A stretch of DNA of 64,000 nt from Utricularia gibba (taxonomy: Eukaryota; Plantae; Magnoliophyta), in assembly GCA_002189035.1 (NCBI GenBank), contig NEEC01000007.1, positions 3,162,001 through 3,226,000 of the forward strand. The letters are read 5' to 3'. Numbering within the stretch: the first letter of the stretch is position 1; every line of letters begins with the position of its first letter. Made by a program: the position numbers and the translations under genes. Shown in pieces: positions 2,701 to 59,800 of the stretch. The notes beneath the pieces were generated by a model. It had not been told where the DNA came from. It worked only from the letters and a program-made list of their open reading frames with translations, and searched no databases.

Positions 2701-3593
2701 TGACACTAGTAATATAGTATTAATGATGATTTTATTGAGAATCTTGATGCATCGGTTACTTGGGTAGTTTCATATAATCAAATGATAATTACAATCATTA
2801 ATGAATGGTTAGTTTGATTTGGCAAATGATAATTTTGCTTTCTGCCTACTATAAAATATATTTTTTATTGTCATTATCATCTTTTGAAATTTCTTTTGGC
2901 AAATGAACAGGTCGATTTGATAAGTAAAAATGATGAATTTGAATTGTTTATAGAAAGTGATTTATGCATTGACAATGATACCTTATATTCATGTTTTTCA
3001 TTGTTGAAATGAAATTATGTAATTTTTATATTTCATTGTTTTTTTTTCATGTATTATATTATTTTAAAATGCATATGATTCTACATGATGTCAAAGATAA
3101 GAAAAATAAATATTATTTAAATATGATTAAATAGAAATGATCATTTTTTCAATAAAAAACAAGTTATTTATCATAACCACTACTACAACATATGTAAAAA
3201 AATAAAATAAAATAGTGCATTTATTTAACACTACAAAATGAGAAAAATCATATTTATCTAATATTTCAAAAGTAATATCATTATAACATGAAAACTACAT
3301 ATTCATCTTCTTCAACATTGCATTCATCTCTTCTTTACCTTTATTCCTGAGGTTTAAAAATATATAAAGAGTTCGTTGATCTACCAAAATATCTTTCGTG
3401 ACCTCAACACGTTGCACCACATCCATATACGGAGACATTTGTGCTAAAATTGTAACAGCTTGTCTTTACTTCACATGCAAATCATGTTTGTATTTATTCT
3501 TATAGAAAGTTATTTGATTTGGGCTATCTAATTGTTCACACCATATGCAATGATAGTTATTAAATCTTATGTTGGATTAATATGATGTTTTCC

Positions 3594-5020
3594 TGATAAA
3601 TGGGAATTTCCTAATATCGTTGTAAATAAAAATAGAAAATCCGTATCAAATAAATTTATAGTCCCTAATCTACACAAAATACAAATTTAGAAAACTTGTA
3701 TAGTGGGTATCGGGGTTGATCACGAAGAGCTTGTACTTGCTAACTATTTTAGTAGATACAAGATTTCAGATAATAGTAGGTGTTAGTCTAAACTCGGACT
3801 AACAGTGGTAAACAAGTTCAGTAAACAAGGTAGGTAAGCAATATCAGGTTTCTACGCTAAGGTACCAGGTACTGGTTTTGACTCAAACTAATACGAGGAC
3901 GCCTTAAGGATCTGCGGGTGGTGTTATGCTAAGCTTCCTAACTTAATTTATTATCTTCCTACACTCACAACTTCAAATAACCTAAGTCTACCCAGGTCAT
4001 TCATGATATTTTTGGCTTAAGCTAGTCCCCAATATCATAACCAACATTGCAATTAGGTCTACCCGCATGCAAGTCATATAGAACTAGGTCTATCTGGTTC
4101 TATTGGTTCTACCCTGGACTAACACCGACTGATCTTATCTTAGTTTGTTGGTCTACCTCTAAACCAAGCATCTAAGTTGTGAAACTACTTGCTCCTCTCC
4201 TTAGGTCTACCCATGGTTTGATAGAAACATGAGTTAAGGAAGACAACTAAATTTCATCATCAACCTAAGCACATACCACCCGCTTTTCCTTAAGGCATCC
4301 CTAAGACTCTAGCCACTCATGCTTTGGAAATAAAACACGATTTCATTCATATAAGTTGGCCAAAATGGCAGAAACATTGTAAACAAGTAAAATGCAGAAA
4401 GTCGAAATGTTCAGAAAACTAGAAAGTAAATAAAGATTGTTCTTCCGCCCGTTAGCTACTGTTCACAGCCCGGAACAGTAGCACTGGACTGGGCTCCAGT
4501 GCTATTCTTGATGATGAAGGCGTTTCTTCCCCCTTCTGGTTGGTTTTTCGCGTTGGGGAAGAAGACCCCTTGCGTCCCCCGCCCCCCCCCCCCCCCCGGT
4601 CGCTTCACTTCTCGCTCTCTCCTCTTTTTCGAAAATAAATTTCCCCTTTCCTTCACTCCATTGCACTATTGCTGTCTGCCAGTACTGTTCCCGACCGCCA
4701 GCACTATTCTCGGCCTGAACTTGCAGACTGCGGTGACGGCAGAACAGTGCTCTTTGTCCTTCTCCGGATTTTGCACCCCTTTTTTGCTTGTTTTACACGT
4801 TTGCAAGTCTGATTTTCGGCTCATCTCCCTACTGAACTTACTGAAACATTAGTAACAAGAGTTGTGGACTAAATCAAAGGATTTAGTTCACTTTTCAACA
4901 TAATCACATAGGATTAACATAAACACCACTAGAGCATGAAAAAACACATTTATCTAACCTAAATCATGATAAAATATAGCTATTTTGTGTTATGAATTTT
5001 AGGAAAAATGTGTGTTATCA
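3594..5020 (-). repeat. Athila 3' LTR (1427 bp)
   Basis: Direct repeat of 13429-14849. About 37 substitutions counted by eye plus a net 6-bp length difference in a poly-C run (~97% identity). Confidence 0.95.
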
Positions 5021-5037
5021 CACTATGCTACAACGAC
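5021..5037 (-). other. tRNA-Asp 5'-end-like 17-mer at the position of the polypurine tract
   Basis: Minus strand reads GTCGTTGTAGCATAGTG immediately before the TG of the 3' LTR. Plant tRNA-Asp(GUC) begins GTCGTTGTAGTATAGTG (recalled), giving 16/17 identity. Confidence 0.8.
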
Positions 5038-5919
5038 ACGAGACTTGTCTCCAAGTCCTAGCTAAGACTAACAGGAAACTAACTTTGTCAGCGCCAATGA
5101 TAAACAGAAACAACTTTGACAAAATTCGGATGCGTGAGCTATAGGAGTGCTAGTGTGCATGTCATGTATCACTCAATGTGCATGAATAAATTTCCCTTTG
5201 GGAGTGTTTTCGAAGATTAATTCCTCAAGTTGATTCGTTCAAAACCGCTTAGGACTAGGGTTGCCAACTCTTTTCTTTCCTCTCTTTTTTTTCTTTTTTT
5301 GGTAGTGAAGGGCAGCTCGTTCTGGATTGATCCGAGCATAATGTCATGGCCTTTCTTGTGAAAGAGTGTTTGCCAAGCACCCAAACCTTATAACTCCAGG
5401 CCTCCTTCTACTCCTCCGGATCAATCCATCCCTCCTTACCCATTCACCACTGATTGAGTCCGCACATGCTTTTCTATTATGTGCTGCTTTTCAGGACTTT
5501 GATCTCAACATTTTTTTTTTCGGTACTGCTTTTCATTTCTTCTTTTTTTTTTCTAAGCTGGCAACCTGTCCCAAGACGATTATCAAGTCCATCAACTCAA
5601 TTTAAGCTAATCTAGATTACACTCCCTAGGTTCCTCTATTCATGCGCATGCTCTCATAAAATAGAAGGTAAAAACATGCTCCCAAGTATATAAAAGGCAT
5701 AGAAAGCTCTCACATCCAAATAATCTCATAGTTGTAATGTACAATCATGTGGCCATTCAAAGTAGTTCACTGACGGGAAACAAAACAGATAAGCAAGTTC
5801 TCGACTATTTCTAGCATAGACTAAAAGACACATACCCGAACAGCATCCTAAGTAAAAGTAAAACTAATAAATAAAAATAAAAATAAAATAAAACTACGCA
5901 AAATAAGTTCAGCAGCAAG

Positions 5920-7710
5920 TTACTTGCTCAGGGAGGAGTCTTTCACTCCCTGTTTCAATTCTTGCACTTCACGAATTAAATCAGACATTTTCTCATTCAA
6001 TTCTTTGATCGTTTCCGGGCAGCAGCATCCTGTGCTGTTGTGCTTGGAGGTTGCAAGAGCAGGGGCATTTGTGTTGCCTTCTTCAGGGATAGACTATCCG
6101 CAAAGACCTGCCAAAGATCTAAAAACAAACCCACTTCCTTGGGCTTCAATTAGTCTTGCCACTTTCAAGAAATATGCATCTAAAGGCATTGTCTTAGACT
6201 CAACATGAAAATATTCCAATTCAGACAGTTTCTCAAGGCATAAAGTATGAGCAATATGCGTAATAATGTTTCCAAAACTCAAATGTTGAATTTTTGTACG
6301 CCTATAGTCTCTAGTCATTTGCTCAGCAATCATGGCACCTAAGTTCAGGGATCGTTTGTTCATGATACACCACATAACAAATAATTCACGCTTATAAAGG
6401 GAATTAAATCCTACTGTTCGTCCAAAGAGGGTGGTGATAACAAGGATATGAACATAACGCATAATCGGATCAACAAACAAATCTGCCTTAGTCCCTTTTG
6501 CCTTAAACTCTATAGCATGCTGGTCGGTCAGAATCGCATAAATTTCCTCAGCATCAAATTCATCAGGATAATGAAAAAGGGATGCAGCAAACTCATGAGA
6601 ATCCACATCATTTTCTGAACAAAATCCTAGAGCTACGTTCCACTCAGCTAATGAAAAAGAAAATTCAATCCCCATTAACCTAAAAGAAATAGCAGCAGGG
6701 TCCAGCACAGTTTCAGGAATTTCATACACAAAAGTGGAAGCAAATTCATAAGAAAGTTCAATATATGCAGGGAATTTCATTTCAAATAAATTCATGAATG
6801 TTGTTCCTTCAAACAGGGAAGAAATTCTATCAGCAATTCCTAATTCTTCCAAAATATCATGATCAATATGACGACATGGTGTTACCTTTGCACCCTTGAC
6901 CTCACCGTACCGTTCAGCTTGCATTTCTTCTGTGAAAGTCAGGTATCGGGTGTTCAACATGTCTGCGTGATGCTTGAAGTATGGTATCCCCTTGCGCGTC
7001 ATTTGCCTATGAAATTTCTCCTTTTCATGCGCAAACTTCCCTGCTTTCAAATACAAAGGCACCAGTCAAGGTAAAAATTTATTTTTCTTAATTGCACCTT
7101 CATTTTCCTTTCCTGTTGTGCTTTTGAGTGGCTGCTCCTCTGCTTCCTCAATCTCCTCATTCTGATTTTCTTGATTTTTGCCCTCATTTCTGTCCATTAG
7201 ATTTTCTTCCTCAGCAGCTTGTTCTTCCTCTGGTCTCTCCATTTCATCTCCTGATTTTTCAGTGTTTTTCTCTGGAGCAGGTGTTGCTGGTTCTTGGGGC
7301 GTGACATCCTCTTCTTCAGGGGTAGGTTCGTCCAGTGGTACTCTCTGCTTTTTCTTCCTGCCCTTCCCTTTCTTCTTCTTCGTCAAGACTTGTGGCTCTA
7401 TCAGCAGTTCCTCCACTGGTGTTTTTCTTTTGTAGCTCTTCTGCATGTCTCTCAATCTTTGTTGGAGGCTGACATTGTCCATGTTGGTGTTGTCAGATGG
7501 TTCTCCCATTTGAGCGGCCTGAAGGATCACGTCCACTCCCTGGAAATTTTCTGCAGAGGCAACAGTAGGCAAATTTCCTTCTTCTAGGGTTGGAGCAGCA
7601 GTGATTTCTGCTTCTGCGGTTCCAGCACCTCCCTTTGGTTGATCCATTTGTATTTTCTTCCGGCTGGGTCTCTCCTTTGCGGCTTTTCTTCCACTTCTTG
7701 TTGCAGGCAT
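5920..7710 (-). pseudogene. Athila env-like/accessory ORF (~596 aa) interrupted by two in-frame stops
   Basis: ORFs 7066..7710, 6094..7062 and an open 5920..6093 tail share one frame, with TGA at 7068-7066 and TAG at 6096-6094. The product has a K/E-rich N-terminus, a central domain resembling ATHILA ORF-1/plant transposon protein, and a C-terminal coiled coil. A candidate splice acceptor TTACAG lies 13 nt upstream of the ATG. Confidence 0.75.
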
Positions 7711-7994
7711 GTTGTTTCTACCGCTGTAATTTCTCAGAAAAATTTACAAAAGAAACGGTTGAAGTGAGGAACAAAGAAACTGCTCCTCCAATTCATTTCA
7801 AGCTGCGGGGATGTTTCTGTCATTTCCTTGGGTTCGACTTCCCACTTCCCTCAACGGTTGAATTTTTATGTAACTCCTAATGCTTAATTTCCCTTGAGTT
7901 AAGCACCCATCCTTGCCCAGCAGCACAAAACATGGCAAAAATCCTAAAAAAACATTAAAACAGAAATAAAATGCATAAATTAAAAGAGTTAACC

Positions 7995-8030
7995 ATGGGT
8001 TGCTTCCCACAAGCGCCCTTGTTTAAAGTC
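7995..8030 (-). promoter_or_regulatory. Conserved Athila post-pol motif
   Basis: GACTTTAAACAAGGGCGCTTGTGGGAAGCAACCCAT lies just after the integrase stop. It resembles the recalled GCGCT..GGGAGGCAACCC motif of Athila elements and can fold as a hairpin. Confidence 0.5.
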
Positions 8031-8052
8031 TTAGACTCGACTTCTTGTGTGG

Positions 8053-11000
8053 CTACGTTTTTTGTGAATCCATCAGCTTGATCACCTCCAGACTTCCTGT
8101 GATCATGTTAGCATTTTCATAGAACATTTTTAATCTATGGCCATTTACCAAAAATCCCTTGTTTGAGTCTCCATCAAATATTTCTACAGCACCATTTGGA
8201 AAAATTTCCTTCACAATAAAAGGCGCTATCCATCTTGATTTCAGCTTCCCAGAATGCAATTTCAACCTGGATTGAAATAATAAGCATTTCTGGCCAATCT
8301 CGAAATTTCTCCTGGAAATGTGCGCGTCATGATATCTCTTAGTCCGAGCCTTGAATAGTTTTGAGCTCTCGTACGTGTCATTTCTCAACTCTTCCAGTTC
8401 CGAAAGCTGGAGTTTTCCTGTGGCTTGCACTAAGGTCTCTATCCAAATTTAACTTCTTCACAGCCCACCAGACCTTGTGCTCAAGAGCTGCTGGTAATCT
8501 ACAAGGCTTCCCATAGACCAACCAAAATGGAGAGGTTCCAATGGGAGTCTTGTATGCTGTCCGTATAACCCAAAGTGCATCTTTCAACCTCATGCTCCAG
8601 TCCCTTCTGCTTGGGTTCACAACTTTCTCTAGAATTTATTTGATTTCCCTGTTGGAGACTTCAATTTGTCTATTGGTTTGTGGATGATATGCTGTAGAAG
8701 GCTTGTACCAAACATTAAAATGATTCAAAACACTCCTTAAGGCCTGATTATAAAAATGTGTTCCCCTATCACTGATCAGTGCCTTAGGAGTCCCATATCT
8801 CGTGAAGATGTTGTTGCGCAAGAAATTAATCATAGTTTTTGCACCATCAGTCCTCGTAGGGATTGCCTCAATCCATTTGGACACATAATCAACAGTAACC
8901 AAAATATAATTGTAACCTGCTGAAGTAGGAAATGGTCCAACAAAATCTATACCCCATACATCAAATAATTCACATACCAGGATTCCTTGCTGGGGCATTT
9001 CATTTCGGTTTGATAAATTTCCTACCCTTTGGCATGGTTCACAACCTTTGCAATGAGCATAACAATCTCTGAAAATATGTAGCCAATAAAATCTGTAATC
9101 TAGAATTTTTCTTGCTGTTCTATTTGGTCCATGATGTCCATCAAAAGGTATTGCATGACAAGAATCAATTATTTTTGGAATTTCATTTTCATGAACACAC
9201 CTTCGAATGACACCATCATTGCATCTCTTCCATAAATATGGGTCATCCCATATGTAGTATTTGGCATCACTCTTAATCTTGTTCCTCGCATGATAGTCCA
9301 TTCCAGGTGGCATCACCCCTGTGGAAACAAAGTTTGCAAGATCAGCAAACCACGGTTCACATATACTAGTCTGAACTGAGAATAGCTGTTCATCCGGGAA
9401 CGTTTCAATAATGATTCCATCCCCTTCACTTCCTTCAATCCTGCTGAGATGATCAGCCACAAGGTTCTCCCTTCCAGGCCTGTCCTTTATCTCAACATCA
9501 AACTCTTGAACAAGAAGGACTCATCTAATGAGTCTTGGTTTGGAGTCCTTCTTCTCCATTAAGTGCTTCACCACCGAATGATCAGTGTACACCACCACCT
9601 TGCTACCTAAAAGATAAGAATGAAATTTTTTCAAAGCAAAAATAACAGCAAGAAATTCCCTTTCAGTGATGGTATAATTTTTCTGGGCCTCATCCAAAGT
9701 TTTCGAAGCATAAGAGATAACATGGTGCTTTCCTTCAATTTTCTGTCCCAAAACAGCACCCACAGCATGATTACTTGCATCATACATGATCTCAAAATCA
9801 TATTTCCAATCAGGTGGTTGCATAACAGGTGCAATAGTAACAGCCTTTTTTAAAGAATTAAAAGCTTGCTTACATGAATCATCAAAATCAAAGGCAATAT
9901 CATTATGCAACAACCTACTAAGAGGCAAGGCAATTTTCGAAAAATTCTTAATAAACTCCTATAAAAACTAACATGTCCTAAAAATGATCTAATACCTTTC
10001 ACATCAATAGGATAAGGAAGTTCAGACATAATCTCAATTTTTGCCTTATCTACCTCAATGCCTTTTTTAGAAATCACATGGCCTAAAACAATTCCATGAT
10101 CCACCATAAAATGACATTTTTCAAAATTTAAAACCAAATTCTTTTCCATACATTTCTTTAAAACCTGATCTAAATGGTCTAAGCATGACTCAAAATTCTC
10201 TCCATATACAGTAAAATCATCCATAAATATTTCAATAAAATCATCACCAAAATTAGAGAAAATACTAGTCATACACCTCTGAAATGTGGCTAGGGCATTA
10301 TATAATCCGAAGGGCATCCTCCTATATGCATAAGTTCCAAATGGGCATGTGAAGGTTGTCTTATCTTGGTCCTGTCCTGAAATAGGAACCTGATTATATC
10401 CAGAATATTCATCCAAAAAACAATAAAATGATTTTCCAGCCAATTTTTCCAACATTTGATCAATAAAGGGCAAAGGATAATGGTCTTTCTTTGTCACTTC
10501 ATTTAATTTTCGATAATCAATGCAAACGCACCATCCATTTTGCACCCTTTGTGGAACAAGCTCGCCTTTCTCATTCTCCACCACAGTCATCCCTGTCTTC
10601 TTTGGCACCACGTGAATGGGGCTCACCCATACACTACCTGTGATAGAGTAAATAATCCCTGCATCATGGAGTTTAACAATTTCTTTTCTTAACACCTCCA
10701 TCATGTTTGGGTTGAGGCGTCTTTGAGGTTGGCGAACTGGTTTTGCACAATCCTCCAGAAAAATTCTGTGCATGCATATGGATGGGCAGATCCCCTAAAT
10801 GTCATCAAGCGTCCAACCTATTGCTTTCTTGTTTCTGTTCAGGACCTCGAGCAGTTGCGACTCTTTGTCTGAGCTCAAACCAGTGGAGATGATAACCGGG
10901 TTCCTGAACTCTGCGTCAAGAAAAACGTATTTCAAATGATTAGGCAATGGTTTTAATTCAGCTAACCTCTCTTCCTGAGTGTTGGCTTGCACCACATTTA

Positions 11001-13379
11001 ATTGCTCGAATTTTTCTTCAGCTTCTAATTTTGCAAATAAAGATTCTTCATGAGCCTCTTCCTTTTCTTGAATTTCTTTCTTCAAGTGCTCCTCAATTAG
11101 TCCATCCATGACATCCACAGCACAAATGCTCTCAAAATCACTGGGATAATTCTTCACATCCTTCATGTCCAGTGTGATTTTGTCTTCATCAAAAGAAAGC
11201 TCAATGGTCCCCATCTTCACGTTGATAATAGCATTAGAAGTGCTCAAGAATGGTCTCCCAAGATAATGGTCGTGTCTTTTGATCCTCCAGTGGGCATGTT
11301 CACCACATAAAAATCAGATGGGAATACAAGATGCTCAATTTTCACCAAAACATCCTCTACTAGGCCCTCGGGAGAGATCACTCTCCTATCCGCTAACTCA
11401 ATTTGCACACCCGACGCTTGCAAAGGTCCCAACCTATGTGCCTCATAAACAGAATTCGACATGACATTTATAGAAGCTCCCAAGTCTGCCATAGCTCTCC
11501 TAATGCACAAATCTCCTATTTTGCATGGAATAAAAAATGTACCCGGATCCTTACGCTTCTCGGGTAATTTCCATGTAAGAAGTGCTGAGCAGCTTTCACT
11601 CAACTTCACCTTGCCCTTCTCCTTCAGCTTCGGTTTGGACATACACAATTGCTTCAAATATTTAACACTCTTCGGCACAAGATCAATATACTCCAAAAGA
11701 GTCAAATTCAATTGAGTGTTTCCCAATGCTTTCAACATTTTCTCCTTCTCGGATTGCTCTTCTTTCAGCTTCAGCCTTCCTGGAAAAGGAGGCTGAGTCA
11801 CCTTCACCGTGAAAGGTTCTGGTAGCACCTCGACTTCATCCTCACTCTGTACAACAACTTCATACTCTTTTGTCTCGTTCTCCTTAGTCTCGGGCTGGAA
11901 TAATTCTCCTCCAGGCTTCTCTTTTCCACTCCTAAGTGTCATGGCGCTGATGTTCGGCCCTCCACTGGAATTTGGATTTGGCTTGGGTTGAGATGGCAAA
12001 CTCCCTTTCTGTTTTAGGTCTCCGAGCTCTGCTGCTAGCTGACTCACTTGAACCTCCAAATTCCAGATTGCTTGTTGATTTTCAGCTTGATTCTTAATTG
12101 ATTGCACCATGAATGTCTTCAACATATCTTCCAACGAATTTCCAGAATTCACTCCAGCATTTCCTTGATTTGAGACTTGAAATGGCTGCTGGTTTTGTTG
12201 GTTTGGCCTTCGAAATGGAGGCGCCTGATAAGATCTTTGCTCCTGAAAATTTTGCTGCCCCATGGTTGAGCTTTCTCCTTTGTAAGAATTTTCATTGTTG
12301 CTCCAACGAAAATTTGGATGATCCCTCTAGCCTGGGTTGTAAGTGTTAGAATAAGGGCCATATTTCTTCCTTTACTGGGGCTCCAAGTATCCCATAGCCT
12401 TGACATGCTCTTCTTCAAATAAATCTAGGCACTTGTCCGCAACATGCCTTGTTTTGTGGCAGTTTCCGCATGGCATGTTCTTAGCCTGGAATAAGAATAG
12501 CTCCTTCATCATTTCTGACATAGCAGCAACATTTTTTGTGAGCTCATTTTCTGAACCTCCGGGCTTGCTCTCCAGTTCATACACCCTCTTGTTTGAGGCT
12601 TGCTTCCTGATGATATGCCTCAAATGCTCAGCCAACTCCTCAAGCAAGGAAAGTGCTTCGATTGGTGTCTTCTTTCTTAGAAATCCTCCTACCGCTGAAT
12701 CTACCATTGCTCGGTCAGTGCATAATAATCCATCATAGAAGTATTTGACCAAAGCATTGGTCTGAAAACCATGGTGTGGGCAGGATCCCAAAAGATGGTT
12801 AAATCTCACCCAATATTCGTGCAATGATTCTCGACTCATTTGTTCAACATCACTGATTTCTTTTCTAATTCCTTCAGCCTTGGAAGCTGGAAAATACTTG
12901 CTCAAAAACACTTTCTTCATTCCAGCCCAATCGATTATGCTTCAAGGCCTTAGTGAGTTGAACCATGTTTTAGCTCCTCCTTCCAAAGTGAACTGGAAGG
13001 CTCTCAAACAAATAGAATCTTCAATCATTCCTGCTCCCTTGAATGAAGTGCATACCGCTGTTACATTGTCTAGATGCTCATGGGGGTTCTCTCCAATTTT
13101 TCCATAAAACTTGGGCAAAAAATTGATCATCGCTGGTTTCAGCTCATTCACTCCATCCTCTGGAAATCTAATGCACAAACCCCTGTACGTGTGATCAGCA
13201 GCATCCAATTCATTTAAGGTCTTCTCAGGTTCAACCATTGTGAAATTTTTGTTAGTCTCGGGTGAGAGTTGTCTCGATCTTCTCACTTCCCTAACTCTTA
13301 CCCTGTTCTTGCTTATAGCTCTCTCAATTTCTGGAAGGAAAGTGAGATTACCTACAGCAAAAGAATGTAAATGCATCAA
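8053..13379 (-). pseudogene. Athila gag-pol (gag, aspartic protease, RT, RNase H, integrase), multiple stops and frameshifts
   Basis: gag LPKFYGKIGENPHEHL; protease AMADLGASINVM; RT SVWVSPIHVVPKK, IDYRKLN, FMDDF; RNase [14 protein letters not shown]; integrase [39 protein letters not shown]. Confidence 0.93.
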
Positions 13380-13407
13380 CTAAAAACACAAAACAATTAA
13401 ACACTGC

Positions 13408-13425
13408 TCCCCGGCAACGGTGCCA
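13408..13425 (-). other. Primer-binding site complementary to the tRNA-Asp(GUC) 3' end
   Basis: Minus strand reads TGGCACCGTTGCCGGGGA, 17/18 to TGGCGCCGTTGCCGGGGA, the complement of the recalled plant tRNA-Asp 3' end ...TCCCCGGCAACGGCGCCA. This is the typical Athila primer. Confidence 0.92.
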
Positions 13426-13428
13426 ATT

Positions 13429-14849
13429 TGATAAATGGGAATTTCCTAATATCGTTGTAAATAAAAATAGAAAATCCGTATCAAATAAATTTATAGTCCC
13501 TAATCTACATAAAATACAAATTTAGAAAACTTGTATAGTGGGTATCGGGGTCGATCACGAACAACTTGTGCTTGCTAACTATTTTAGTAGATACAAGATT
13601 TCAGATAACAGTAGGTCTTAGTCTGAACTCGGACTAACAGTGGTAAACAAGTTCAGTAAACAAGGTAGGTAAGCAATATCAGGTTTCTACGCTAAGGTAC
13701 CAGGTACTGGTTTTAACTCAGACTAATACGAGGACGCCTTAAGGATCTGCGGGTGGTGTTATGCTAAGCTTCCTAACTTAATTTAATATCTTCCTACACT
13801 CACAACTTCAAATAACCTAAGTCTACCCAGGTCATTCATGATATTTTTGGCTTAAGCTAGTCCCCAATATCATAACCAACATTGCAATTAGGTCTACCCG
13901 CATGCAAGTCATATAGAACTAGGTCTATCTGGTTCTATTGGTTCTACCCTGGACTAACACCGACTGATCCTATCTTGGTTTGTTGGTCTACCTCTAAACC
14001 AAGCATCTAAGTTGTGAAACTACTTGCTCCCCTCCTTAGGTCTACCCATGGTTTGATAGAAACATGAGTTAAGGAAGACAACTAAATTTCATCATCAACC
14101 TAAGCACATACCACCCACTTCTCCTTAAGGCATCCCTAAGACTCTAGCCACTCATGCTTTGGAAATAAAACACGATTTCATTCATATAAGTTGGCCAAAA
14201 TGGCAGAAACAATGTAAACAAATAAAATGCAGAAAGTCGAAATGTTCAGAAAACTAGAAAGTAAATAAAGATTGTTCTTCCACCCATTAGCTACTGTTCA
14301 TAGCCCGGAATAGTAGCGCTGGACTGGGCTCCAGTGCTATTCTTGATGATGAAGGCGTTTCTTCCCCCTTCTGGTTGGTTTTTCGCGTTGGGGAAGAAGA
14401 CCCCTTGCGTCCCCCCCCCCCCCACCCGTCGCTTCACTTCCCGCTCTCTCCTCTTTTTCGAAAATAAATTTTCCCTTTCCTTCACTCCATTGCACTATTG
14501 CTGTCTGCCAGTACTGTTCCCGACCGCTAGCACTGTTCCCGGCCTGAACTTGCAGACTGCGGTGAAGGCAGAACAGTGCTCTTTGTCCTTCTCCGGATTT
14601 TGCGCCCCTTTTTTGCTTGTTTTACATGTTTGCAAGTTTGATTTTCGGCTCATCTCCCTGCTGAACTTACTGAAACATTAGTAACAAGAGTTGTGGACTA
14701 AATCAAAGGATTTAGTCCACTTTTCAACATAATCACATAGGATTAACATAAACACCACTAAAGCATGAAAAACCACATTTATCTAACCTAAATCATGATA
14801 AAATATAGCTATTTTGTATTATGAATTTTAGGAAAAATGTGTGTTATCA
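13429..14849 (-). repeat. Athila 5' LTR (1421 bp)
   Basis: Direct repeat of 3594-5020. On the minus strand it is followed by AAT and then the PBS. Confidence 0.95.
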
Positions 14850-16439
14850 TTTCCCTTCTCATCAATGAGATATATCACATGAATTGTATCCAAATCACGT
14901 ATGTTTTCAAATGACCTTGTCTTTCCTTTATTTCATTTCAATTTTCATGTTTTCAAATGGATCAAAGTTGTCAATAAAATGCAAATCTTTGAAGATATTT
15001 GCTGTTGCAGAATGCAAATCAATAGCCATATATCATGCAACACGATTTTTACCAAATATCTAAATCTTATTTGCATACTAATGAATTGATTTGTTATTTA
15101 CTTTCTGTAGAGTAGTATGACCTTCAACTCAATGAAAATTATTTTATACAAGAAAAAATTTCAGACAAATAAATAAAAACAAATTCATACTTTTATAATC
15201 AATTGATTCTTGACATGGGCAACACACATGATAAATGTATATAGTTTGCTTACTAGTCATGAATTCTTTACTAAATGTGCACTATCACATGCAAGCTCAA
15301 TTTTGACATGTGACTAACTTGATTTGAACATATTTTCAAATTTTCATCTGATACTAATAATCGCTTTTATGACTTAAAGTAATAATTTCTCTTTAAGTAG
15401 TAATCATGATCATCTTTTTCCTTTCTTCATCTTGATGTTTTCTTTCTCTTTACTTCTACCATATTATAGCATCAAATCTTTAGATATATACAAACAATTA
15501 CAAGACTAATAAAAAGTAATCCTAATTTATTGACATAAAAAGAAGAGAAGAAAAATGATAATTGGAAGGCAAACTTTTTTATAAAAGAAAAAGATAATAT
15601 TGTATTTTAATATTGTGGTATTAGGAAAAACTATATAATACATAAGTTTGTATTTTACTATTCATAAAGTGTTAAATAATAATTCTATTACGATATGTAA
15701 TTTATAATATTATATAATATTACATATCTAATATATGATTAAAATATATTATTTAAAACATTACAATCTTACACCTTTTATCAAACAAGCCCTAGAGTTA
15801 ATAAAAAATTATTTTGAAAGTTAACTTGAACACTATATTAAAGTTTTTGCTAAGTACTGAAACCTATTTTATATTTATGTGATATTCTTCCTCGGAAACT
15901 TATGTATAATAATGTTGCAAAATTCGAATCAAAGTTTAAATATTTTAAAGTACAGTGAAAACCTTCTACTTATATATTTCTTATTTTATGATTAATAATC
16001 TTGACGTATATGGTGATGATGTTTAAATGAATTTGTTGTAGCTTTGTTTTAGGATTTTTTAATGTTATCTATAATTTTATAACAAAAAGATATGGATCAA
16101 GTACAAAATTATATTGTTTATTTTGGTATTTTAAAATTATATAGGTGCACTTAACGAATCTTATTTTGATATATTAGTTAGCCAACAACTAGTGATAAGG
16201 TTTTGTCATCAAAAAAGCACATCCACCAACATCTTTCGTGTTTATGATAGCCAAGTTCTACATGATGTTGTTAGTCATAATTTCAGTGTACAAAAAGGTT
16301 AGTTATGCATATTATTTTATTATTTAATGCGAATCATTTAGAATACTTATATCACACAATCACAAGTTATTATTATCTTTTTATGATGAGTTTTTAATTC
16401 CTTATTGAGGTGTTCATTATTATCTAAAAGAATGAAAAC

Positions 16440-29245: not shown

Positions 29246-32200
29246 ATGGAAGAGGCAGGCGGCCAAGTAATTACTCCAATTGCAGACTATCAAAATTTGG
29301 TTGGAAGGTTTTGTGATTCATATCCAACCTCGAAAAAACGTGGTGTTAGCGTTCACGCACCAAATGCTGCTTATCCTGACACTTCTGAGACCTGGAATGC
29401 TAATTCTTGGGATTGGGATCCTACAAGGTTTGTCGCGAAACCTTTGCAATGTGATGACGTTATAGTGGTCGGTGGTCAAGGAATATTGAGGAGAAACGAT
29501 GATCAAAGCAACGACTCAAATCCAAGGATGGTTCACCCCACGAGAGAAGACCAAGAAAATATTTTTTTGAAACTTGGAGGGGATAGTTCTGCTAAAAGTG
29601 GGACTAGTGGTGAGACAGATTCAGAAGAATTACAGCCATCGTCTAAACCTGTGAAACGAGTAAGAGCCGGTTCTCCTGGCGGTGCTAACTATCCTGTTTG
29701 CCAAGTTGACGGTTGCAAAGAAAATCTATCGGCAGCAAAGGATTATCATAGGCGGCACAAGGTATGTGGCATCCATAGCAAGACTGCGGAGGCGATGGTT
29801 GGTAGACAGATTCAAAGATTCTGCCAGCAGTGTAGCAGGTTTGTAATTTCTGGTTTGATTTCTGAAACAGCTGCGCCTGTATTGCTTTCTAAAACTTGAA
29901 TAATCTTTTCCCTTTTAAGATTCATTTACTCTGATCTGGACTATAATTTTAGGCTGCCATTTCTATATTTTATGATGTTTTGGTGAAGCTGAAGATGCAG
30001 ATGAGCTTGCTTAATCTATGGCTGAGCTCTATGTTTGTTTTTTTATAAAAGCCATCGTTTTATTATGGCTATATATGAGGATATTTGAGATGCATGTCTG
30101 GAAAGAAGTAGGTGCTTTAAAAAATGAATATGATTTTGTTTCATTTTCCCAGGTTCCACCTTCTCAGAGAGTTTGATGCTGGTAAAAGAAGCTGTAGACG
30201 CAGGCTTGCTGGCCATAACCGTAGGAGGAGAAAGATTCATTCAGAAGACAGTAACACACAGCTGCTAGCTCCTCAAAACCGTGACAAAAATATCAGCGAT
30301 GTTGACCTTGTCAATCTTCTGGCAATGTTATCACAGGCACAACATAACAACCGTGACACTAATAGATCATTTCCAAACAAGGACCAGCTTGCCCAAATTA
30401 TTGGTAATATGAATTCATCTTTGCCAGAGACACTGGGACCTAAACTGAAGGGGTGTGTTCCAAGGCATGTTAACAGTGTGAATCAGAACTCAACTGACAA
30501 AGAAAATACTTCTCTACCATCAACCAGGGACTTGCTTGCAGTTCTGACAGCCACTTCACCTGCTCCTCGCACACATGATAGTCAATCTGATCAAACAAGT
30601 GCTGAAGGAAGTGAATCAGAGAAGAGCAAATCAAGTTGTGTTAATGAAGTAGCACACCTGAATTTTCACAGCGGAGTAACAAGAGAATTTCCCTTTGTTG
30701 GTCAGAGCAGTAGAATAACTTCCAGCCCTCCACTAGGGGATGGAGAACTCAATGTTATTGAGACACCTCCGAGTTTACCTTTGCAATTGTTCAGCAGCTC
30801 TCATGATGATCAACATTTGAGAAAGGGCCAAGATTGTAATGTGCTTTCAGCTCAATTCAAAAATCCTTCACGAGAGGCCTTCCAGTTATCCTCAAAACTG
30901 GTTGTACATGATTTCTTTGCAATGCATAGCTCAAGGGAGAACCCGAAGGATGGCAATCTTCCAAGTGGTGAAGTTGAATTGCCATATTTACGAGGAAATA
31001 CAAGCAACTTCTGTAGTACATCACTTCAGCTATATGGTGGCCCTAGTCGACTTGGTGAAAATGTTTCATTTCAGGAATCACATAACCATATGGAGCAACC
31101 ATCTACTTCGGGTTCCTATTATTCAACTGCTCTAAAGTCTGACTGTCAGGTAATGTTCATCATTAATCTTTTGTCCGAGGAGATTTTCTTGGTCCCTTAT
31201 GATTTGACATGTTTTTTTTTTCTTTATAGGATCAGACTGGTCGCATTATCTTCAAACTATTTGACAAAGACCCCAGTCATCTGCCGGGGTCATTACGAAC
31301 TCAGGTCTGCAACTCTTGTTTCCTTTTTCTCATTATTATAATTTTCTCCTTGCTGATATGTGGGATATATCCTTTTCCTATCTTTACAGATATACAATTG
31401 GCTGTCAAACAGTCCTTCTGACATGGAAAGCTACATCAGACCTGGCTGCATCCTATTATCTGTATATGTTGCAATGTCACCAATCGAGTGGGATAAAGTG
31501 AGTTGTTTTATGATCAAAGACTTTACACATGGATGTTGAATAAATATTTCATGGTATTATCCTTGCAGCTTGAAGAAAACCTTCTCAATTATTTGAAAAT
31601 GTTAGTGGATGTCATTGATTCTCGGTTTTGGGGAGCTGGTCGATTTTTGGTTCACACAAACAGACAAATGGCTATCTCTAATGGGGGTAACTCCCTCCCT
31701 ATTTATAAATTTTTTGCTGTCGATTGAAATATTCCCAATAAACGTAAGTCTGCATGTGTGTACACCAACTGAAATTTTCATACGTCAATCTTCAGGGAGA
31801 ATCCGCCTCTGCAAATCTGGGAGAGCTGGGAGTGTGCCGCAATTGATCTCAGTCTCTCCTCTGGCTGTTGTCTCTACAGAGGAAACTTCTATTTTACTGA
31901 AGGGGACAAGATTGCTGGCTTCAAGCACCATGTATGATGTTACATTCAATACAACGAATACTGTTATCTTATTTCCTTGATTGAACATTGTTGTTTGTTA
32001 TAGGATTCACTGCACGCATGCAATGGGGTATTGCATAGAGAAGCACACATCATCATCTCAAAACTCGATGTATGATGAGATACTCTTGGTTGGCTTCAAG
32101 GTTGAGGGGCATCAACAAATCGCCTTGGTCGTTGTTTCATTGAGGTATCACTTGATTGAACATGTATTGAAGAATTTGAATGGAGTTTCCAGTTACAAAT

Positions 32201-33350
32201 ATTTTGATTTCAGGTCGAAAATGGTTCAAGAGCTGCAAGTTTCCCGATCATCATAGCAGATAAAGCCATCTGCCAGGAATTGAAATTCCTTGAACCTGAG
32301 ATTGATTGTCGTCTTGAAATTGGTGATGGTATTCCAACTTATGTTGCTGAGGATGAAGATCGGTCTGATTCTAGAGAGTGGGCCCTTCATTTCTTGAATG
32401 AACTTGGATGGTTGTTTCAGAGAAAGAATAATTCTTCTCCATCTGCTTTTCAGGACTACAGTCTCACTCGCTTAAAATTTCTTCTCATGTTTTCTGTCGA
32501 ACATGACTTTTGTGCTGTAGTCAAAACACTCTTGGACATTCTGGCAGAGATGAACCTCTGTCAAGAAGGGTTAGTTGGGGATTCTTTGGAGATGCTGTCA
32601 GAGATTCAACTTTTGACGAGGGCTGTGAGAAGGAGGTGCCAAGGCATGGTTAATAAGCTTATTCATTACTCTATCATTGATCCAGTAGATAATTCGAAGA
32701 AATACATTTTTCGATCTGATGTGGCCGGGCCTGGTGGCATTACGCCTTTACACTTGGCTGCTTCTTTGCCAAATGCAGCTTCCATTGTTGATGCTCTAAC
32801 ATGTGATCCGCTGGAGGTATTTTCCCTTTCACTCCCAATGTTTTTTGAAACCTGTTCTTGCTCTCTGTTATGTGCCTGCCATTCGCTGCGCCATTTTCAA
32901 CTTGGAGATTTTCGTTTTTTGTAGGTTGGACTGAGAAGCTGGGGATCTGTCCTTGACGAACAAGGACTCTCCCCATTGGAATATGCGTCAGTGAGCAACA
33001 ATCATTCCTACAACTCCCTAGTTGCTCAGAAGCTTGCAGACAAGAGTAATGATCAAGCCTCAATATCAATTGATAATGCTGAACAACTTTCAGTGGAAAT
33101 AGATGGTCACAAGAATCCCTCAAACTTGAGGCCAGGAACACAACCATGTTCCAAATGTGCAGTAGTTGCAGCACTTGGCTACAGCAGAAAGATCTCAGGT
33201 CCTCCAGCTTTGCTTCATCGTTCCTACATCCATTCAATCCTGGTCGTTGCGGCGGTTTGCGTGTGTGTATGTCTGCTCCTCAGAGGGCGCCCGTTTGTTG
33301 GTTATAGCCCACCGTTTGCATGGGAAACCTTGGATTACGGTGCATTCTAG
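29246..33350 (+). CDS. SPL14: SQUAMOSA promoter-binding-like protein, SPL14/SPL16 clade (SBP domain, ankyrin-like region, C-terminal TM)
   Basis: [10 protein letters not shown] motif; SBP domain CQVDGC...HRRHKVC...RFCQQCSR|FH...[17 protein letters not shown], split at the conserved intron 29839-30152; [16 protein letters not shown]; IRPGC; [12 protein letters not shown]; TM tail [17 protein letters not shown]. Nine coding exons inferred with GT-AG sites. Paralogue number is tentative. Confidence 0.93.
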
Positions 33351-49130: not shown

Positions 49131-50118
49131 TTTACCATATTTTTTATATTTAATTTGATGTTTGATTCTATTTTTTGCAAAGTTTTTTTTACCAACATGC
49201 CATTTAGTATTATATAACCCAATGAAATGTGGGAAAATCTCAGATTAGTCTCAAGCACCTAAGAAAAATAACTCAATCGAACATTGTTAGTGAGGTACAT
49301 TAGGTACATTCTATCTAATTTGTCTGCAAGGTGTAAGGTGTAGGGATTAAATTTGAGTATGAGAAAAGCATAAATTATCACAAAAGGAGAAATGACTCTA
49401 ATAATATAATTGATTCTATAATCTCATTAAATGATAAATGGTGATATAATAGTTATCGAGTATCATTATTTTAGAATAATACTTTTAAAATTTACACAAA
49501 TAGATCAATCCTTAAGGTTTACATATATAGGTATAGTCAAATTTTGAATAAGATAGATTCTAGATCTAAAGCCACTTTTTATGTTGTTTTTAAAACTAAA
49601 CTTTTGCTTTATTTTCATTTTTTTGAGTTATTGTTTTGAAAGAAAATTCTAATAACATTTTACTATAAATATAATCTTATTTTATTTTTTCAATGGATTT
49701 TGTACAATTGCATAATTATCATCATTAAATTCAATTTTTGTCTTCTATATTCAATTCCCATATATTTATTCATTTCTCAACTACCATATTCAAGTCTATA
49801 TGTGAAGTCATATTCATTTGTATACTTCTGCCATAAAAAATTTTCAAAACATAATACCCAAAATTCAATTCATACCATACAATGGTTCTCCATCAAAACA
49901 AGTGACTTAGTTCAACTTAATACATTAAAACACAAGTCAAATGCATCAAAACAAGTGAACTTAATTCAATCTAATACATAAAACATAAGTGAAATACATG
50001 AAAAAAATACATCTATTTCAATTTTTATCAGAAAGGTTCACTTAGAGATTATCTTCCCGCATCTAGAAAGTGCTATAAGATTCGTTGGATAATTTAGTAT
50101 TTGCAATGCCATAATATG

Positions 50119-56872: not shown

Positions 56873-59800
56873 ATGGTGGAAAATAGCACAGCCACCAACC
56901 CGGCTCATGACGGAAGTGCCGACGCGCGAGACCCCGGCCTTATGATCACTAGCAAGGAGCAACTGAAAGCCTTGCTAACGGAAATCCTTACCGACTTCCG
57001 GGCACCTTCAGGTCTCAACTCCAACGCCCAGGAGAGAACACCCGAAACCGCACCACGAACGGCGAAGCAACCTCTTATTCTGGAGTACCCCAGATACGGA
57101 GACTGAATCCGAAACCGAAGAGGAGATGCTACGGAGAAAGAGGCTCAACCAAGTCGTGTATGAGCCAGGTGCTGATAGGGAAAACATGACTAGCAAAATC
57201 TTGGAAGAAAGAGAAGAAGAGTTGAAGAGAGAGTTAGACCAGATCCGCGAGAGGAAAAGATTTATCGACAAGCGGATGTTGGCAGGGAGAAGAGAGGATA
57301 GAGGCTTCAAGGACGTTTTCGATCAGAACGTATCCACTAGGAGAGGAGATGTTTTGGCCGATATTGCTTTGGCCTTAAAGAGTGGAGTTGAGGGAGCGAC
57401 TGGAACCACAACGCTGCGTTTTGACCCTTTCTCAGACGATTTAGTCGGAGAAGAGCCCGAGAGAGGATTTAGAGTCCCAGACGGATTACCCACGTATGAC
57501 GAAAAAGGGGACCCCATATCGCATGTAACCGACTTCGATAAGAGGATGTCCACAGTTCGACATTTAGAGGCCATGAAGTGTAAGCTGTTTGCTTGCTCGC
57601 TCCAAAAAGGAGCGAAGACTTGGTTTAAACAGTTAGAACCATGTAGCGTGGCATCTTATCGGGAATTAGTATTGCTCTTCACTACTCGATACATTGTTAA
57701 CATTGAAGCTCCACCTTTGAAGGCATCACTATACTCTATTCGGTACGATCACCGAAAATAGAGCTTGCGAAGATTCATCGATCGATTCAACTGCTTGGCG
57801 CAGGATGTCCAATTGGATTTAAAAGAAAGGGTGGAAATAATGAAGCGGGCCTTAGGAACGTCGAAATTGGGACAGAGTCTATCGAAGTCCCCACCAAAGA
57901 ATCTCGGAAAATTGCTAAGGAAAATCATGAAATACATCCGAGTGGACGACGACCTCAGGGCCGAGATGAAAAGTCGTGTGGAGATTCGTCCAGTCCCACA
58001 GCAGGAGACCCAACTTAACCGGGGACCCAGGCCGAATAAGCGCCGTGAAGTATATCAGGTGGAACCAACCAGAACAGATGCCTACTGCGAAATACACAAG
58101 ACCACCGGGCATGATACTGCCCACTGCCAACTGATGAAGAGGATGATCAAGCAGTATCATGCTGGTCAAGGGATGAACAACGTGATGCGGAACCCCGCAT
58201 CAATGACGGACTGGAAAAGAGGACGTAACGAGCGAACGGGGAACGAAGGGAACCGATATCCGAAATTCCTTCCGAAACCGGGGATGGCGAACTTGCAAGC
58301 CAACAGGGAACCGAATCTTGGAGGAGGACAAGACCTATCAGAAAGTTCACGGAGTGCCCATCAAATGCAGGGTAGTCCCCCCTATATTCGGGAAATCCAT
58401 ATGATATCCGGAGGAACCGAGATGGATGTGTCCGGAAAGGAACGGAAGAGATATTTGGATGAAGCTAGAAGAGGAGAAGTTTTTGAAATCGGAAATGGTC
58501 CGACTGAGAAAGCTGCTTGGGAAAAGGAAGAGATCAGCTTCTCCGACAAAGATGTCCCGACCGGCCCAGCCATGAGAGATGAGCCTTTGGTGGTGTCAGG
58601 AATATGTGGGAGCACCAAAGTAAGGAGGATTCTTATCGATCAAGGATCCTCGTGCAACATCATGAAGAAGGAAGTGGTCGAGTTATTGGCGTCATCTAAC
58701 GAGGGAAATATTCGCCTTGTGCACATGGAGTTGTACACATTCGACCAGCGGGCCGTGCAAACTATCGGGAAAATAACCCTGCCTGTAACATTCGAAGCGC
58801 CAGGGCGGAGTCGAACCGAGAGGTTGGAATTCTTAATCCTCGTACAACATCATCCTCGGGCGACCCGACATCAACAAATTCGGTATGTTACCCTCCACTG
58901 TGCATTTGAGAATCAAATTCCCAACGTCGAAGGGCATTTGTACGATGGGTATCGACCGACCAACTGCCCAGTCCTGTTACGTATCTTCCTTTCGGGACCC
59001 TTGCGCGAAAAAGTCGAGAGTGATGATGGTAGAAAAGGAACCCCGAGAACCCCCTAGGCAAGCAATGGAACCAATAGGGTACAAGTCGGTGCAACTAATA
59101 CCAGAAGATGCGCAGAAAGCCACCCACATCGGTGCCAATCTAGACGCTGGATTCGAGAAAAGGTTAGTTCAACTTTTGATGAAGAACATCGATATTTTTG
59201 CCTGGACTGCTACGGATTTTGTAGGCATCGATCGATCCGTCGCCGAACATCACATTGATACCTACCCGGGGACAAAACCGATTCGGCAGAAGCAACGACA
59301 TTTCTCAGAGGAAAAGTGCCAAATTATCAAAGAAAAAACAAGAGAGCTCTTGGAAGCTGGTTATGTGAAGGAGATCTAGTACTCCGAATGGGTAGCCAAC
59401 CCGATCATCGTCCCGAAGCTCGGGGGAAAATGGAGGATGTGCATTGACTTCACCGACCTCAACGCCTGCTGCGAAAGAGACCCTTATCCTTTGCCAAAGA
59501 TCGACAAGCTAGTAGACGCCATTGCCGGATCCCGATTCCTTAGCACCATGGATGCCTATTCGGAGTATCATCAAATTTTCGTTGCAGAGAAAGACCAACC
59601 GAAAACCACCTTCTACACTAAGGATGGGGTTTACTGCTACGTGGCAATGCCTTTCGGATTGAAGAATGCTGGGGCGACTTACCAGAGGTTGGTAAATAAA
59701 ATATTCTCTTCTGAAATCGGTACCTCAATGGAGGTGTATGTGAACGATATGATCGTGAAATCTATGAATGAAGAAGGCCATTTAGCGTATTTGGATTCGT

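What the first reader, a model, noticed from the sequence alone, without database searches (positions are those of the whole stretch)
5021..5037. Athila element carries the 5' end of its primer tRNA-Asp exactly where the polypurine tract should be: possible dual-tRNA priming
Seen: on the element's sense (minus) strand, the 17 nt directly before the TG of the 3' LTR are GTCGTTGTAGCATAGTG. There is no purine or G run at the junction; the nearest purine-rich tract is ~250 bp away (5271-5300). Established: plant tRNA-Asp(GUC) starts GTCGTTGTAGTATAGTG, the PBS at 13408-13425 is complementary to the 3' end of the same tRNA, and plus-strand DNA is normally primed from a PPT abutting the 3' LTR. The match starts at tRNA nucleotide 1, covers the D-arm as well as the acceptor stem, and ends at the LTR edge. 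The single mismatch would be a tolerated U:G pair against minus-strand DNA. Inference: minus-strand cDNA is complementary to the tRNA 5' arm at this site. The 5' arm of the primer tRNA, freed when its acceptor stem melts onto the PBS, or a host 5' tRNA fragment, could anneal here, tether both ends of the intermediate and, after cleavage near nt 14-17, prime plus-strand synthesis. One tRNA would then prime both strands. I do not recall this arrangement being described, but cannot exclude it.
Basis: partly seen in the sequence, partly recalled or inferred. Interest (0 to 1): 0.88.

Follow-up and report, generated by a model that had tools for sequence, protein, structure and literature searches.

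The report
Primer-tRNA patch replaces retrotransposon's polypurine tract
In one old, broken Athila-type plant retrotransposon, the short purine-rich signal that normally starts second-strand DNA synthesis has been replaced, base for base, by the first 17 bases of the tRNA the element uses to start its first strand; eleven relatives keep the normal signal, so this is a real but so far isolated oddity.

Summary
The element lies on the minus strand at 3594-14849, with 1.42-kb LTRs (97.3% identical), TG..CA ends and a GGAAA target duplication. The 17 bases before the 3' LTR (5037..5021) match 16 of 17 bases of a published plant tRNA-Asp 5' end. Bases 1-7 pair 7/7 with the acceptor strand implied by the element's own PBS. 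Chance at a fixed site is about 3e-9.

The junction has no G run. In 11 Athila-lineage relatives, from a grass to Arabidopsis suecica, all with the same tRNA-Asp-type PBS core, none carries the 17-mer. Nine keep a run of four or more G before the LTR. The window keeps the upstream hairpin and its spacing, so the tRNA-like stretch replaces the usual tract length for length.

Best reading: a piece of the packaged primer tRNA was copied into the cDNA by a reverse-transcriptase template switch. The exact LTR edges show that plus-strand DNA started right after the junction at least once. Dual-tRNA priming is not a feature of the sampled relatives. It cannot be excluded for this family, because no sister copies could be reached.

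The parts
3594..14849 (-). Whole Athila-lineage LTR retrotransposon, 11,256 bp
   Evidence: LTR pair and target duplication; Pfam gag, RVT_1, RT_RNaseH, integrase and ATHILA ORF-1 family
13429..14849 (-). 5' LTR (starts TGATAAC, ends TTTATCA)
   Evidence: Local alignment with the 3' LTR: 97.3% over 1421 columns
3594..5020 (-). 3' LTR
14850..14854 (-). Target-site duplication GGAAA, upstream copy
3589..3593 (-). Target-site duplication GGAAA, downstream copy
13408..13425 (-). Primer binding site of tRNA-Asp type, 3 nt (AAT) after the 5' LTR; one G>A difference from relatives' PBS
5021..5037 (-). 17-mer equal to bases 1-17 of plant tRNA-Asp (16/17), in the slot of the polypurine tract and abutting the 3' LTR
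5042..5057 (-). Small stem-loop GACTTG-GAGA-CAAGTC, shared in position with relatives, 4 nt upstream of the 17-mer
5268..5300 (-). 33-nt pure purine run about 280 nt before the 3' LTR; four relatives have comparable runs at similar distances
8053..13379 (-). gag-pol remnant (gag, RT, RNase H, integrase). Broken: split into at least eight ORF pieces; against intact relatives, 2-3 frame changes and 1-9 in-frame stops depending on the comparator
6094..7710 (-). Extra ORF downstream of pol (Pfam ATHILA ORF-1 family / PF20167), in two pieces separated by one in-frame stop

Best explanation
The 17-mer is a captured copy of bases 1-17 of the element's own primer, tRNA-Asp. It overwrote the 15-17-nt polypurine module found before the 3' LTR in most sampled Athila-lineage relatives, from a grass to Arabidopsis.

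Most likely origin (inferred): during minus-strand synthesis, reverse transcriptase finished copying U3, switched onto a packaged tRNA-Asp near base 17, and copied it to its 5' end. There it was forced to switch again and resumed on the genomic RNA just upstream of the tract. The patch begins at base 1 of the mature tRNA, which points to an RNA template rather than a tRNA gene.

Shown: both LTRs of this copy begin at exactly the same base, so plus-strand DNA was started directly after the junction in the cycle that made this copy.

Not decided: whether that primer was an RNA oligo from a parent genome that already carried the patch, or the 5' part of the tRNA left on, or annealed to, the minus-strand DNA. 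The relatives give no sign of an evolved two-strand tRNA priming system.
For: The match is 16/17 to the published tRNA-Asp 5' end and starts at base 1. Bases 1-7 pair 7/7 with the acceptor strand implied by the PBS. Chance is 3e-9.

In the 11 relatives the last 17 nt are only 3-9/17 identical to the tRNA, and 9 of 11 have a run of four or more G in the last 12 nt. Six of 11 have the pentamer CTAAG just upstream, and none has the 17-mer within 3 mismatches anywhere in its locus.

The window keeps the upstream hairpin and a spacing of 21 nt to the LTR (relatives: 16-22 nt). It therefore looks like a replacement, not an insertion. The LTR edges and target duplication are intact.
Against: Only one copy is available, so a heritable, functional feature of a whole family cannot be told from a one-off event. 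An equal-length replacement (17 for 15-17 nt) is not what a random template switch predicts. Seeing a rare one-off event in a single window is unlikely a priori, which favours a family-wide trait. The proposed microhomologies are seen only in individual relatives, such as a GTG before the LTR in Hibiscus and GT-rich octamers in Malus and Vitis. The C at position 11 is unexplained.
Confidence: 0.55

Rival explanations
1. Heritable dual-tRNA priming. In this family the plus strand is primed by the 5' arm of tRNA-Asp, either the primer still attached to the minus strand or a free 5' fragment. It anneals to the minus-strand DNA at this site and is cut near base 17.
For: The match starts at tRNA base 1 and ends at the base where the plus strand must begin. 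The stretch is only 9/17 purine with no G run, so an RNase H-resistant primer of the usual kind is not expected. The patch has the same length as the tract it replaces, and the spacing to the upstream hairpin is preserved, which hints at selection for function. From my own knowledge, not tested here: retroviral RNase H cuts 13-19 nt from a recessed RNA 5' end, which would fit a cut near base 17.
Against: None of 11 relatives with the same PBS core shows the arrangement. There is no evidence that any other copy has it. The plant 5' tRNA-Asp fragments printed in the papers read are 19-24 nt, not 17, and would leave an unpaired 3' end. Position 11 is a mismatch (a G-U pair at best). The element is degenerate.
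Confidence: 0.2
2. Change at the DNA level after integration. A break at the junction was repaired with filler copied from a tRNA-Asp gene or cDNA, so reverse transcription of the parent element was entirely ordinary.
For: Only this one copy is known. The copy is old enough to have collected damage: 2.7% LTR divergence and several breaks in its genes.
Against: The patch starts at base 1 of the mature tRNA and ends exactly at the LTR edge. It is the same length as the stretch it replaces and shows no flanking deletion or duplication. A gene-derived filler would have arbitrary ends.
Confidence: 0.05
3. Chance resemblance, or gradual drift of the tract towards a tRNA-like sequence.
For: Malus and Vitis relatives have GT-rich octamers at the homologous place, up to 9/17 identical to the tRNA overall.
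Against: Chance is 3e-9 at the fixed site. Relatives score 3-9/17 against 16/17 here. The same tRNA is independently implied by the PBS.
Confidence: 0.01

Closest known systems
Usual Athila-lineage junction between the internal region and the 3' LTR (the 'PPT-3' LTR seed' of ATHILAfinder, preprint 10.64898/2026.03.20.713144)
   Same: Same slot: it lies directly before the LTR TG and 16-22 nt after a small conserved hairpin. The LTR starts TGAT in 9 of 11 relatives and in the window. The PBS is of the same tRNA-Asp type.
   Different: Relatives read, for example, CTAAGTTTGGGGGAGT (A. suecica) or CTAAGCTTGGGGGGAGT (Lolium) before the LTR. The window has no G run and reads like tRNA-Asp bases 1-17 instead.
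Ty3 bipartite primer binding site (review PMC5371799)
   Same: Parts of the primer tRNA other than its 3' end have a counterpart near the 3' end of the genome, which links the two genome ends through one tRNA.
   Different: In Ty3 the genomic RNA is complementary to the T and D arms, the site lies in U3, and it serves minus-strand initiation. Here the genome is identical to the tRNA's 5' arm, not complementary, and the site lies in the tract slot. Ty3 keeps a normal purine tract.
tRNA mimicry in the HIV-1 5' UTR (tRNA-like element; PMC5689005, PMC10730233)
   Same: A retroelement genome carries a stretch that copies, rather than complements, part of its primer tRNA.
   Different: The HIV-1 element mimics the anticodon arm, sits next to the PBS and binds the synthetase. 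Here the copied part is the acceptor 5' strand plus the D arm, next to the 3' LTR. No protein partner is known.
tRNA-like sequence in HIV-1 U3-R that aids minus-strand transfer (Piekna-Przybylska et al. 2010; recalled from my own knowledge, not found in the held library)
   Same: A tRNA-related stretch near the 3' end of a retroelement genome, thought to have been captured from the primer tRNA.
   Different: As I recall it, that stretch is complementary to the tRNA and acts in the first strand transfer. This could not be checked here.
5' tRNA fragments that target Athila transcripts in Arabidopsis pollen (Martinez et al. 2017, PMC5605234)
   Same: It involves 5' tRNA fragments of about 19 nt and Athila elements.
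   Different: Targeting needs complementarity between the fragment and the element's mRNA. Here the sense RNA is identical to the fragment, so only the minus-strand DNA or an antisense RNA could pair with it.

Membership tests
Athila lineage of Ty3/gypsy LTR retrotransposons | LTRs with TG..CA ends and a 5-bp target duplication | tested here: met
Athila lineage of Ty3/gypsy LTR retrotransposons | PBS of tRNA-Asp type a few bases after the 5' LTR | tested here: met
   one G>A difference
Athila lineage of Ty3/gypsy LTR retrotransposons | gag, then RT, RNase H, integrase in that order, plus an extra ORF after pol of the ATHILA ORF-1 family | tested here: met
   (all broken)
Athila lineage of Ty3/gypsy LTR retrotransposons | Conserved G-run junction before the 3' LTR | tested here: not met
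   present in 9 of 11 relatives, absent in the window
Canonical polypurine tract | Abuts the first base of U3 | tested here: met
Canonical polypurine tract | Purine-rich, usually with a G run at its 3' end | tested here: not met
   9/17 purines, longest G run 1
Canonical polypurine tract | Resists RNase H and primes the plus strand | not testable with these tools
   The exact LTR edge only shows that priming once began at this base
Ty3-type bipartite PBS | A stretch near the genome's 3' end that is complementary to the primer tRNA's D or T arm | tested here: not met
   The 17-mer is identical to the tRNA, not complementary. The best antisense match to bases 1-17 in the last 300 nt is 10/17. 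The T arm could not be tested because no full tRNA sequence was at hand
tRNA gene or tRNA-derived SINE | Cloverleaf, or at least both halves of a tRNA | tested here: not met
   ARAGORN found none in the window; Rfam found none in 4800-6100
tRF-5 target site in a transposon mRNA | Transcript complementary to a 5' tRNA fragment | tested here: not met
   The sense strand equals the fragment
   0 of 11
   All relatives reached use the same PBS type
   No sister copy was reachable

The most novel reading that the evidence does not exclude
An Athila family has given up the lineage's G-run polypurine tract and starts its plus strand from the first 17 bases of the tRNA-Asp that primes its minus strand. 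That primer would be either the tRNA still attached to the cDNA or a free 5' fragment. One host tRNA would then define both LTR edges.
Probability: 0.18. Interest if true: 0.9.

Novelty: new variant of a known kind. Interest (0 to 1): 0.6.

Why it matters
The polypurine tract is among the most constant non-coding signals of retroviruses and LTR retrotransposons. In the elements sampled here, its module recurs in relatives from a grass to Arabidopsis. A copy in which it is replaced exactly by the 5' end of the element's own primer tRNA, and which still has precise LTR edges, has two possible meanings. It may record a rare capture of a packaged tRNA by reverse transcriptase at a critical site. 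Or it may point to a way of starting the plus strand that does not need a purine tract. The second reading would change a textbook step of reverse transcription, and it can be checked simply by counting junction types in the host genome.

Tried and rejected
Sister copies could not be found.
- A protein search with the 3' ORF found nothing.
- Integrase and RT searches gave at best 60-68% identity.
- Ten exact window ORFs are not in the collection.
- The junction pattern gave 0 hits in viral contigs and 2 chance hits in a non-plant metagenome.
- The RT query found nothing in viral contigs.

The host species was not identified. The SBP-box gene gave only 39% hits, probably because of the length filter.

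Paper text searches for the junction string and for a C11 variant of the tRNA fragment found nothing. The ATHILAfinder seed sequences exist only as figures.

I rejected four other readings.
- A tRNA gene or SINE: excluded.
- Read-through of the primer tRNA by plus-strand strong-stop DNA: this would give the antisense orientation, and next to the PBS.
- A two-LTR circle junction: this would also give the antisense orientation.
- The upstream purine run as a displaced tract: four relatives also have such a run, three of them together with a G-run tract at the LTR. Priming from it would also have lengthened the LTR, which it did not.

Folding of the junction RNA is not significant (z = -1.4).

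- In early private reasoning I recalled a few short textbook sequences from memory.
- Consensus lines printed by the alignment tool were not used.

Full report
**What is there.** The window holds one complete but degenerate LTR retrotransposon on the minus strand, at 3594-14849 (11,256 bp). Its LTRs (14849..13429 and 5020..3594) align over 1421 columns at 97.3% identity. Both begin TGATAAC and end TTTATCA, and the element is flanked by the 5-bp duplication GGAAA.

Pfam finds gag, RVT_1, RT-RNase H and integrase in the Ty3/gypsy order. It also finds an extra ORF after pol that matches the ATHILA ORF-1 family. Calling it an Athila-lineage element is therefore justified.

The genes are broken. 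The gag-pol region is split into at least eight ORF pieces. Against intact relatives it shows 2-3 frame changes and 1-9 in-frame stops, depending on the comparator. The extra ORF is split by one in-frame stop. With published plant substitution rates (from my own knowledge), 2.7% LTR divergence suggests an age of roughly one to two million years.

**The observation.** On the sense strand, the 17 bases before the 3' LTR are GTCGTTGTAGCATAGTG (5037..5021). They are followed directly by the LTR's TG. The LTR alignment and the target duplication fix that edge, not the 17-mer.

I took the tRNA sequence from papers, not from memory. PMC6521008 prints an 18-nt primer named tRNA-Asp_1F for Nicotiana benthamiana. 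Small RNAs from soybean and okra share its first 18 bases. The 17-mer matches its first 17 bases at 16 positions, with C for T at position 11.

The PBS (13425..13408, 3 nt after the 5' LTR) is of the type described for tRNA-Asp in Athila, Calypso and Diaspora. A check that needs no outside sequence gives the same answer. The acceptor 3' strand implied by the PBS pairs 7/7 with bases 1-7 of the 17-mer, against a chance of 2.4e-4.

The chance of one mismatch or fewer at one fixed 17-nt site is 3e-9. The stretch has 9/17 purines and no G run. The nearest long purine run is 33 nt, at 5268-5300.

**Relatives.** No sister copy of this family could be reached. The best protein identities were 60-68%. 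The 3' ORF found nothing, exact window ORFs are not in the collection, and pattern scans found only two chance hits in a non-plant metagenome. The host species stayed unidentified.

I therefore fetched Athila-lineage elements from other plants by protein and resolved their LTR pairs. The species are Rhodiola kirilowii, Gossypium arboreum, Hibiscus cannabinus, Malus baccata, Vitis vinifera, Sesamum radiatum, Cichorium intybus, Silene latifolia, Arabidopsis suecica, Lolium multiflorum and Argentina anserina (names). The A. suecica element is an ATHILA inside a ~179-bp satellite array.

All eleven have the tRNA-Asp-type PBS core: the 13-nt core is exact in eight, and three carry small changes. 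The A. suecica element shows exactly the 5' junction that the ATHILAfinder preprint calls the commonest in Brassicaceae: TATCA, then ATT, then the 13-nt PBS.

None has the 17-mer within three mismatches anywhere in its locus. Their last 17 bases before the 3' LTR are 3-9/17 identical to the tRNA. Nine of eleven have a run of four or more G within the last 12 bases, and six of eleven have the pentamer CTAAG just upstream. Examples are CTAAGTTTGGGGGAGT in A. suecica and CTAAGCTTGGGGGGAGT in Lolium.

This fits the preprint's statement that the internal-3' LTR junction is conserved in 97% of Brassicaceae ATHILA, with variable positions 1 (C/T) and 6 (T/C) upstream of the tract. The preprint's seeds are shown only as an image, so the fit is my inference. 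On this sample, the G-run module recurs from a grass to eudicots.

**Anatomy of the change.** A small stem-loop lies 16-22 nt before the LTR in the window (5042-5057) and in most relatives. In an alignment of ten sequences, 83% of cells are paired against 20-53% in slid controls, and three of six pairs change on both sides. The window keeps this hairpin and a spacing of 21 nt to the LTR.

Similarity to relatives stops just before tRNA base 1 and resumes at the LTR's TG. The tRNA-like 17 bases therefore replace the 15-17-nt tract module length for length. They are not an added insertion.

Purine runs of 14-27 nt lie 270-430 nt upstream in Gossypium, Hibiscus, Vitis and Silene, and the first three of these also have a G-run tract at the LTR. 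The window's distant purine run is therefore not a displaced tract. Priming from it would also have lengthened the LTR, which it did not.

**How it most likely arose and works.** The sense orientation next to U3 rules out two simple artefacts of reverse transcription. Read-through of the primer tRNA by plus-strand strong-stop DNA, and a two-LTR circle junction, would both place the antisense of the tRNA.

A patch that starts at base 1 of the mature tRNA points to an RNA template, because a reverse transcriptase that reaches the 5' end of a template must switch. My best reading is therefore as follows. During minus-strand synthesis the enzyme left the genomic RNA at the U3 edge. It copied packaged tRNA-Asp from about base 17 to base 1, and then returned to the genomic RNA upstream of the tract. 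This is inference.

What is shown is that both LTRs begin at the same base. Plus-strand DNA therefore started directly after the junction in the cycle that produced this insertion. That primer has two possible sources. If the parent already carried the patch, it was an oligo of genomic RNA of unusual composition. If not, it was the 5' part of tRNA-Asp lying on the minus-strand DNA.

From my own knowledge, retroviral RNase H cuts 13-19 nt from a recessed RNA 5' end.

Two arguments favour a heritable, working feature. The replacement is of equal length with preserved spacing. And a rare one-off event is unlikely to turn up in a single window.

Four arguments go the other way. None of eleven relatives shows the arrangement. 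The copy is degenerate. There is a mismatch at position 11. And the plant 5' tRNA-Asp fragments printed in the papers read are 19-24 nt rather than 17.

**Comparison with what is known.** The closest known arrangement is the Ty3 bipartite PBS. There, the primer tRNA's T and D arms pair with sequences in U3 and bridge the genome ends (PMC5371799). In Ty3, however, the genome is complementary to the tRNA, the site serves minus-strand initiation, and a normal purine tract is kept.

[quoted passage not shown] That element mimics the anticodon arm next to the PBS.

Five-prime tRNA fragments are known to target Athila mRNAs by complementarity (PMC5605234). Here the sense RNA is identical to the fragment.

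I found no description of a tRNA 5' end in the tract slot. The library is incomplete, so this is absence of evidence only.

**Verdict.** The feature is real and not due to chance, and it sits at a mechanistically critical site. I file it as a new variant of a known kind: an Athila-lineage element whose polypurine tract is replaced by a patch from its primer tRNA.

The dual-priming mechanism is not supported as a feature of the sampled relatives, and it remains an open, minority possibility for this family (about 0.18). A census of junctions among sister copies in the host genome would settle most of the question.

Noticed in passing
window 5042-5057 (minus strand); also L012, L013, L014, L002, L005, L007, L001, L008 and L009 just upstream of their 3' LTRs: A small stem-loop (6 bp, purine-rich tetraloop) lies 16-22 nt before the 3' LTR and is shared from Lolium to Arabidopsis. 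83% of cells are paired against 20-53% in slid controls, and 3 of 6 pairs change on both sides. Its position suggests a role in marking the plus-strand primer site.
   Followed up: partly
window 5268-5300 (minus strand): A 33-nt pure purine run lies about 280 nt before the 3' LTR. Runs of 14-27 nt at 270-430 nt upstream also occur in the Gossypium, Hibiscus, Vitis and Silene relatives. This may be a second, internal purine tract of the lineage.
   Followed up: partly
window 13408-13425: The PBS differs from that of all relatives by one G>A change inside a CpG. This is the kind of change expected from decay of methylated DNA after insertion.
   Followed up: no
window about 29246-33000 (+): Pieces of an SBP-box (SPL-type) transcription factor gene. 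The best database matches were only 39% identical, probably because the length filter excluded full-length relatives. The host species stayed unidentified.
   Followed up: partly
window about 57126-61753 (+): Remnant of a second retroelement (Pfam gag match, long ORFs). It has no LTR pair and no tRNA-Asp-type PBS in the window.
   Followed up: no
L012 3296-8306 and 19278-22318: The Arabidopsis suecica ATHILA used as a comparator is inserted in an array of about 179-bp satellite repeats and has a GATCC target duplication.
   Followed up: no
L009 15604-17230: In the Cichorium relative, the LTR that follows the internal region is itself followed by a second PBS and more internal sequence. This gives an LTR-internal-LTR-internal arrangement, either tandem or recombinant.
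   Followed up: no
window 49891-50004: A short tandem repeat: 53-bp unit, 2.2 copies, 85% matches.
   Followed up: no
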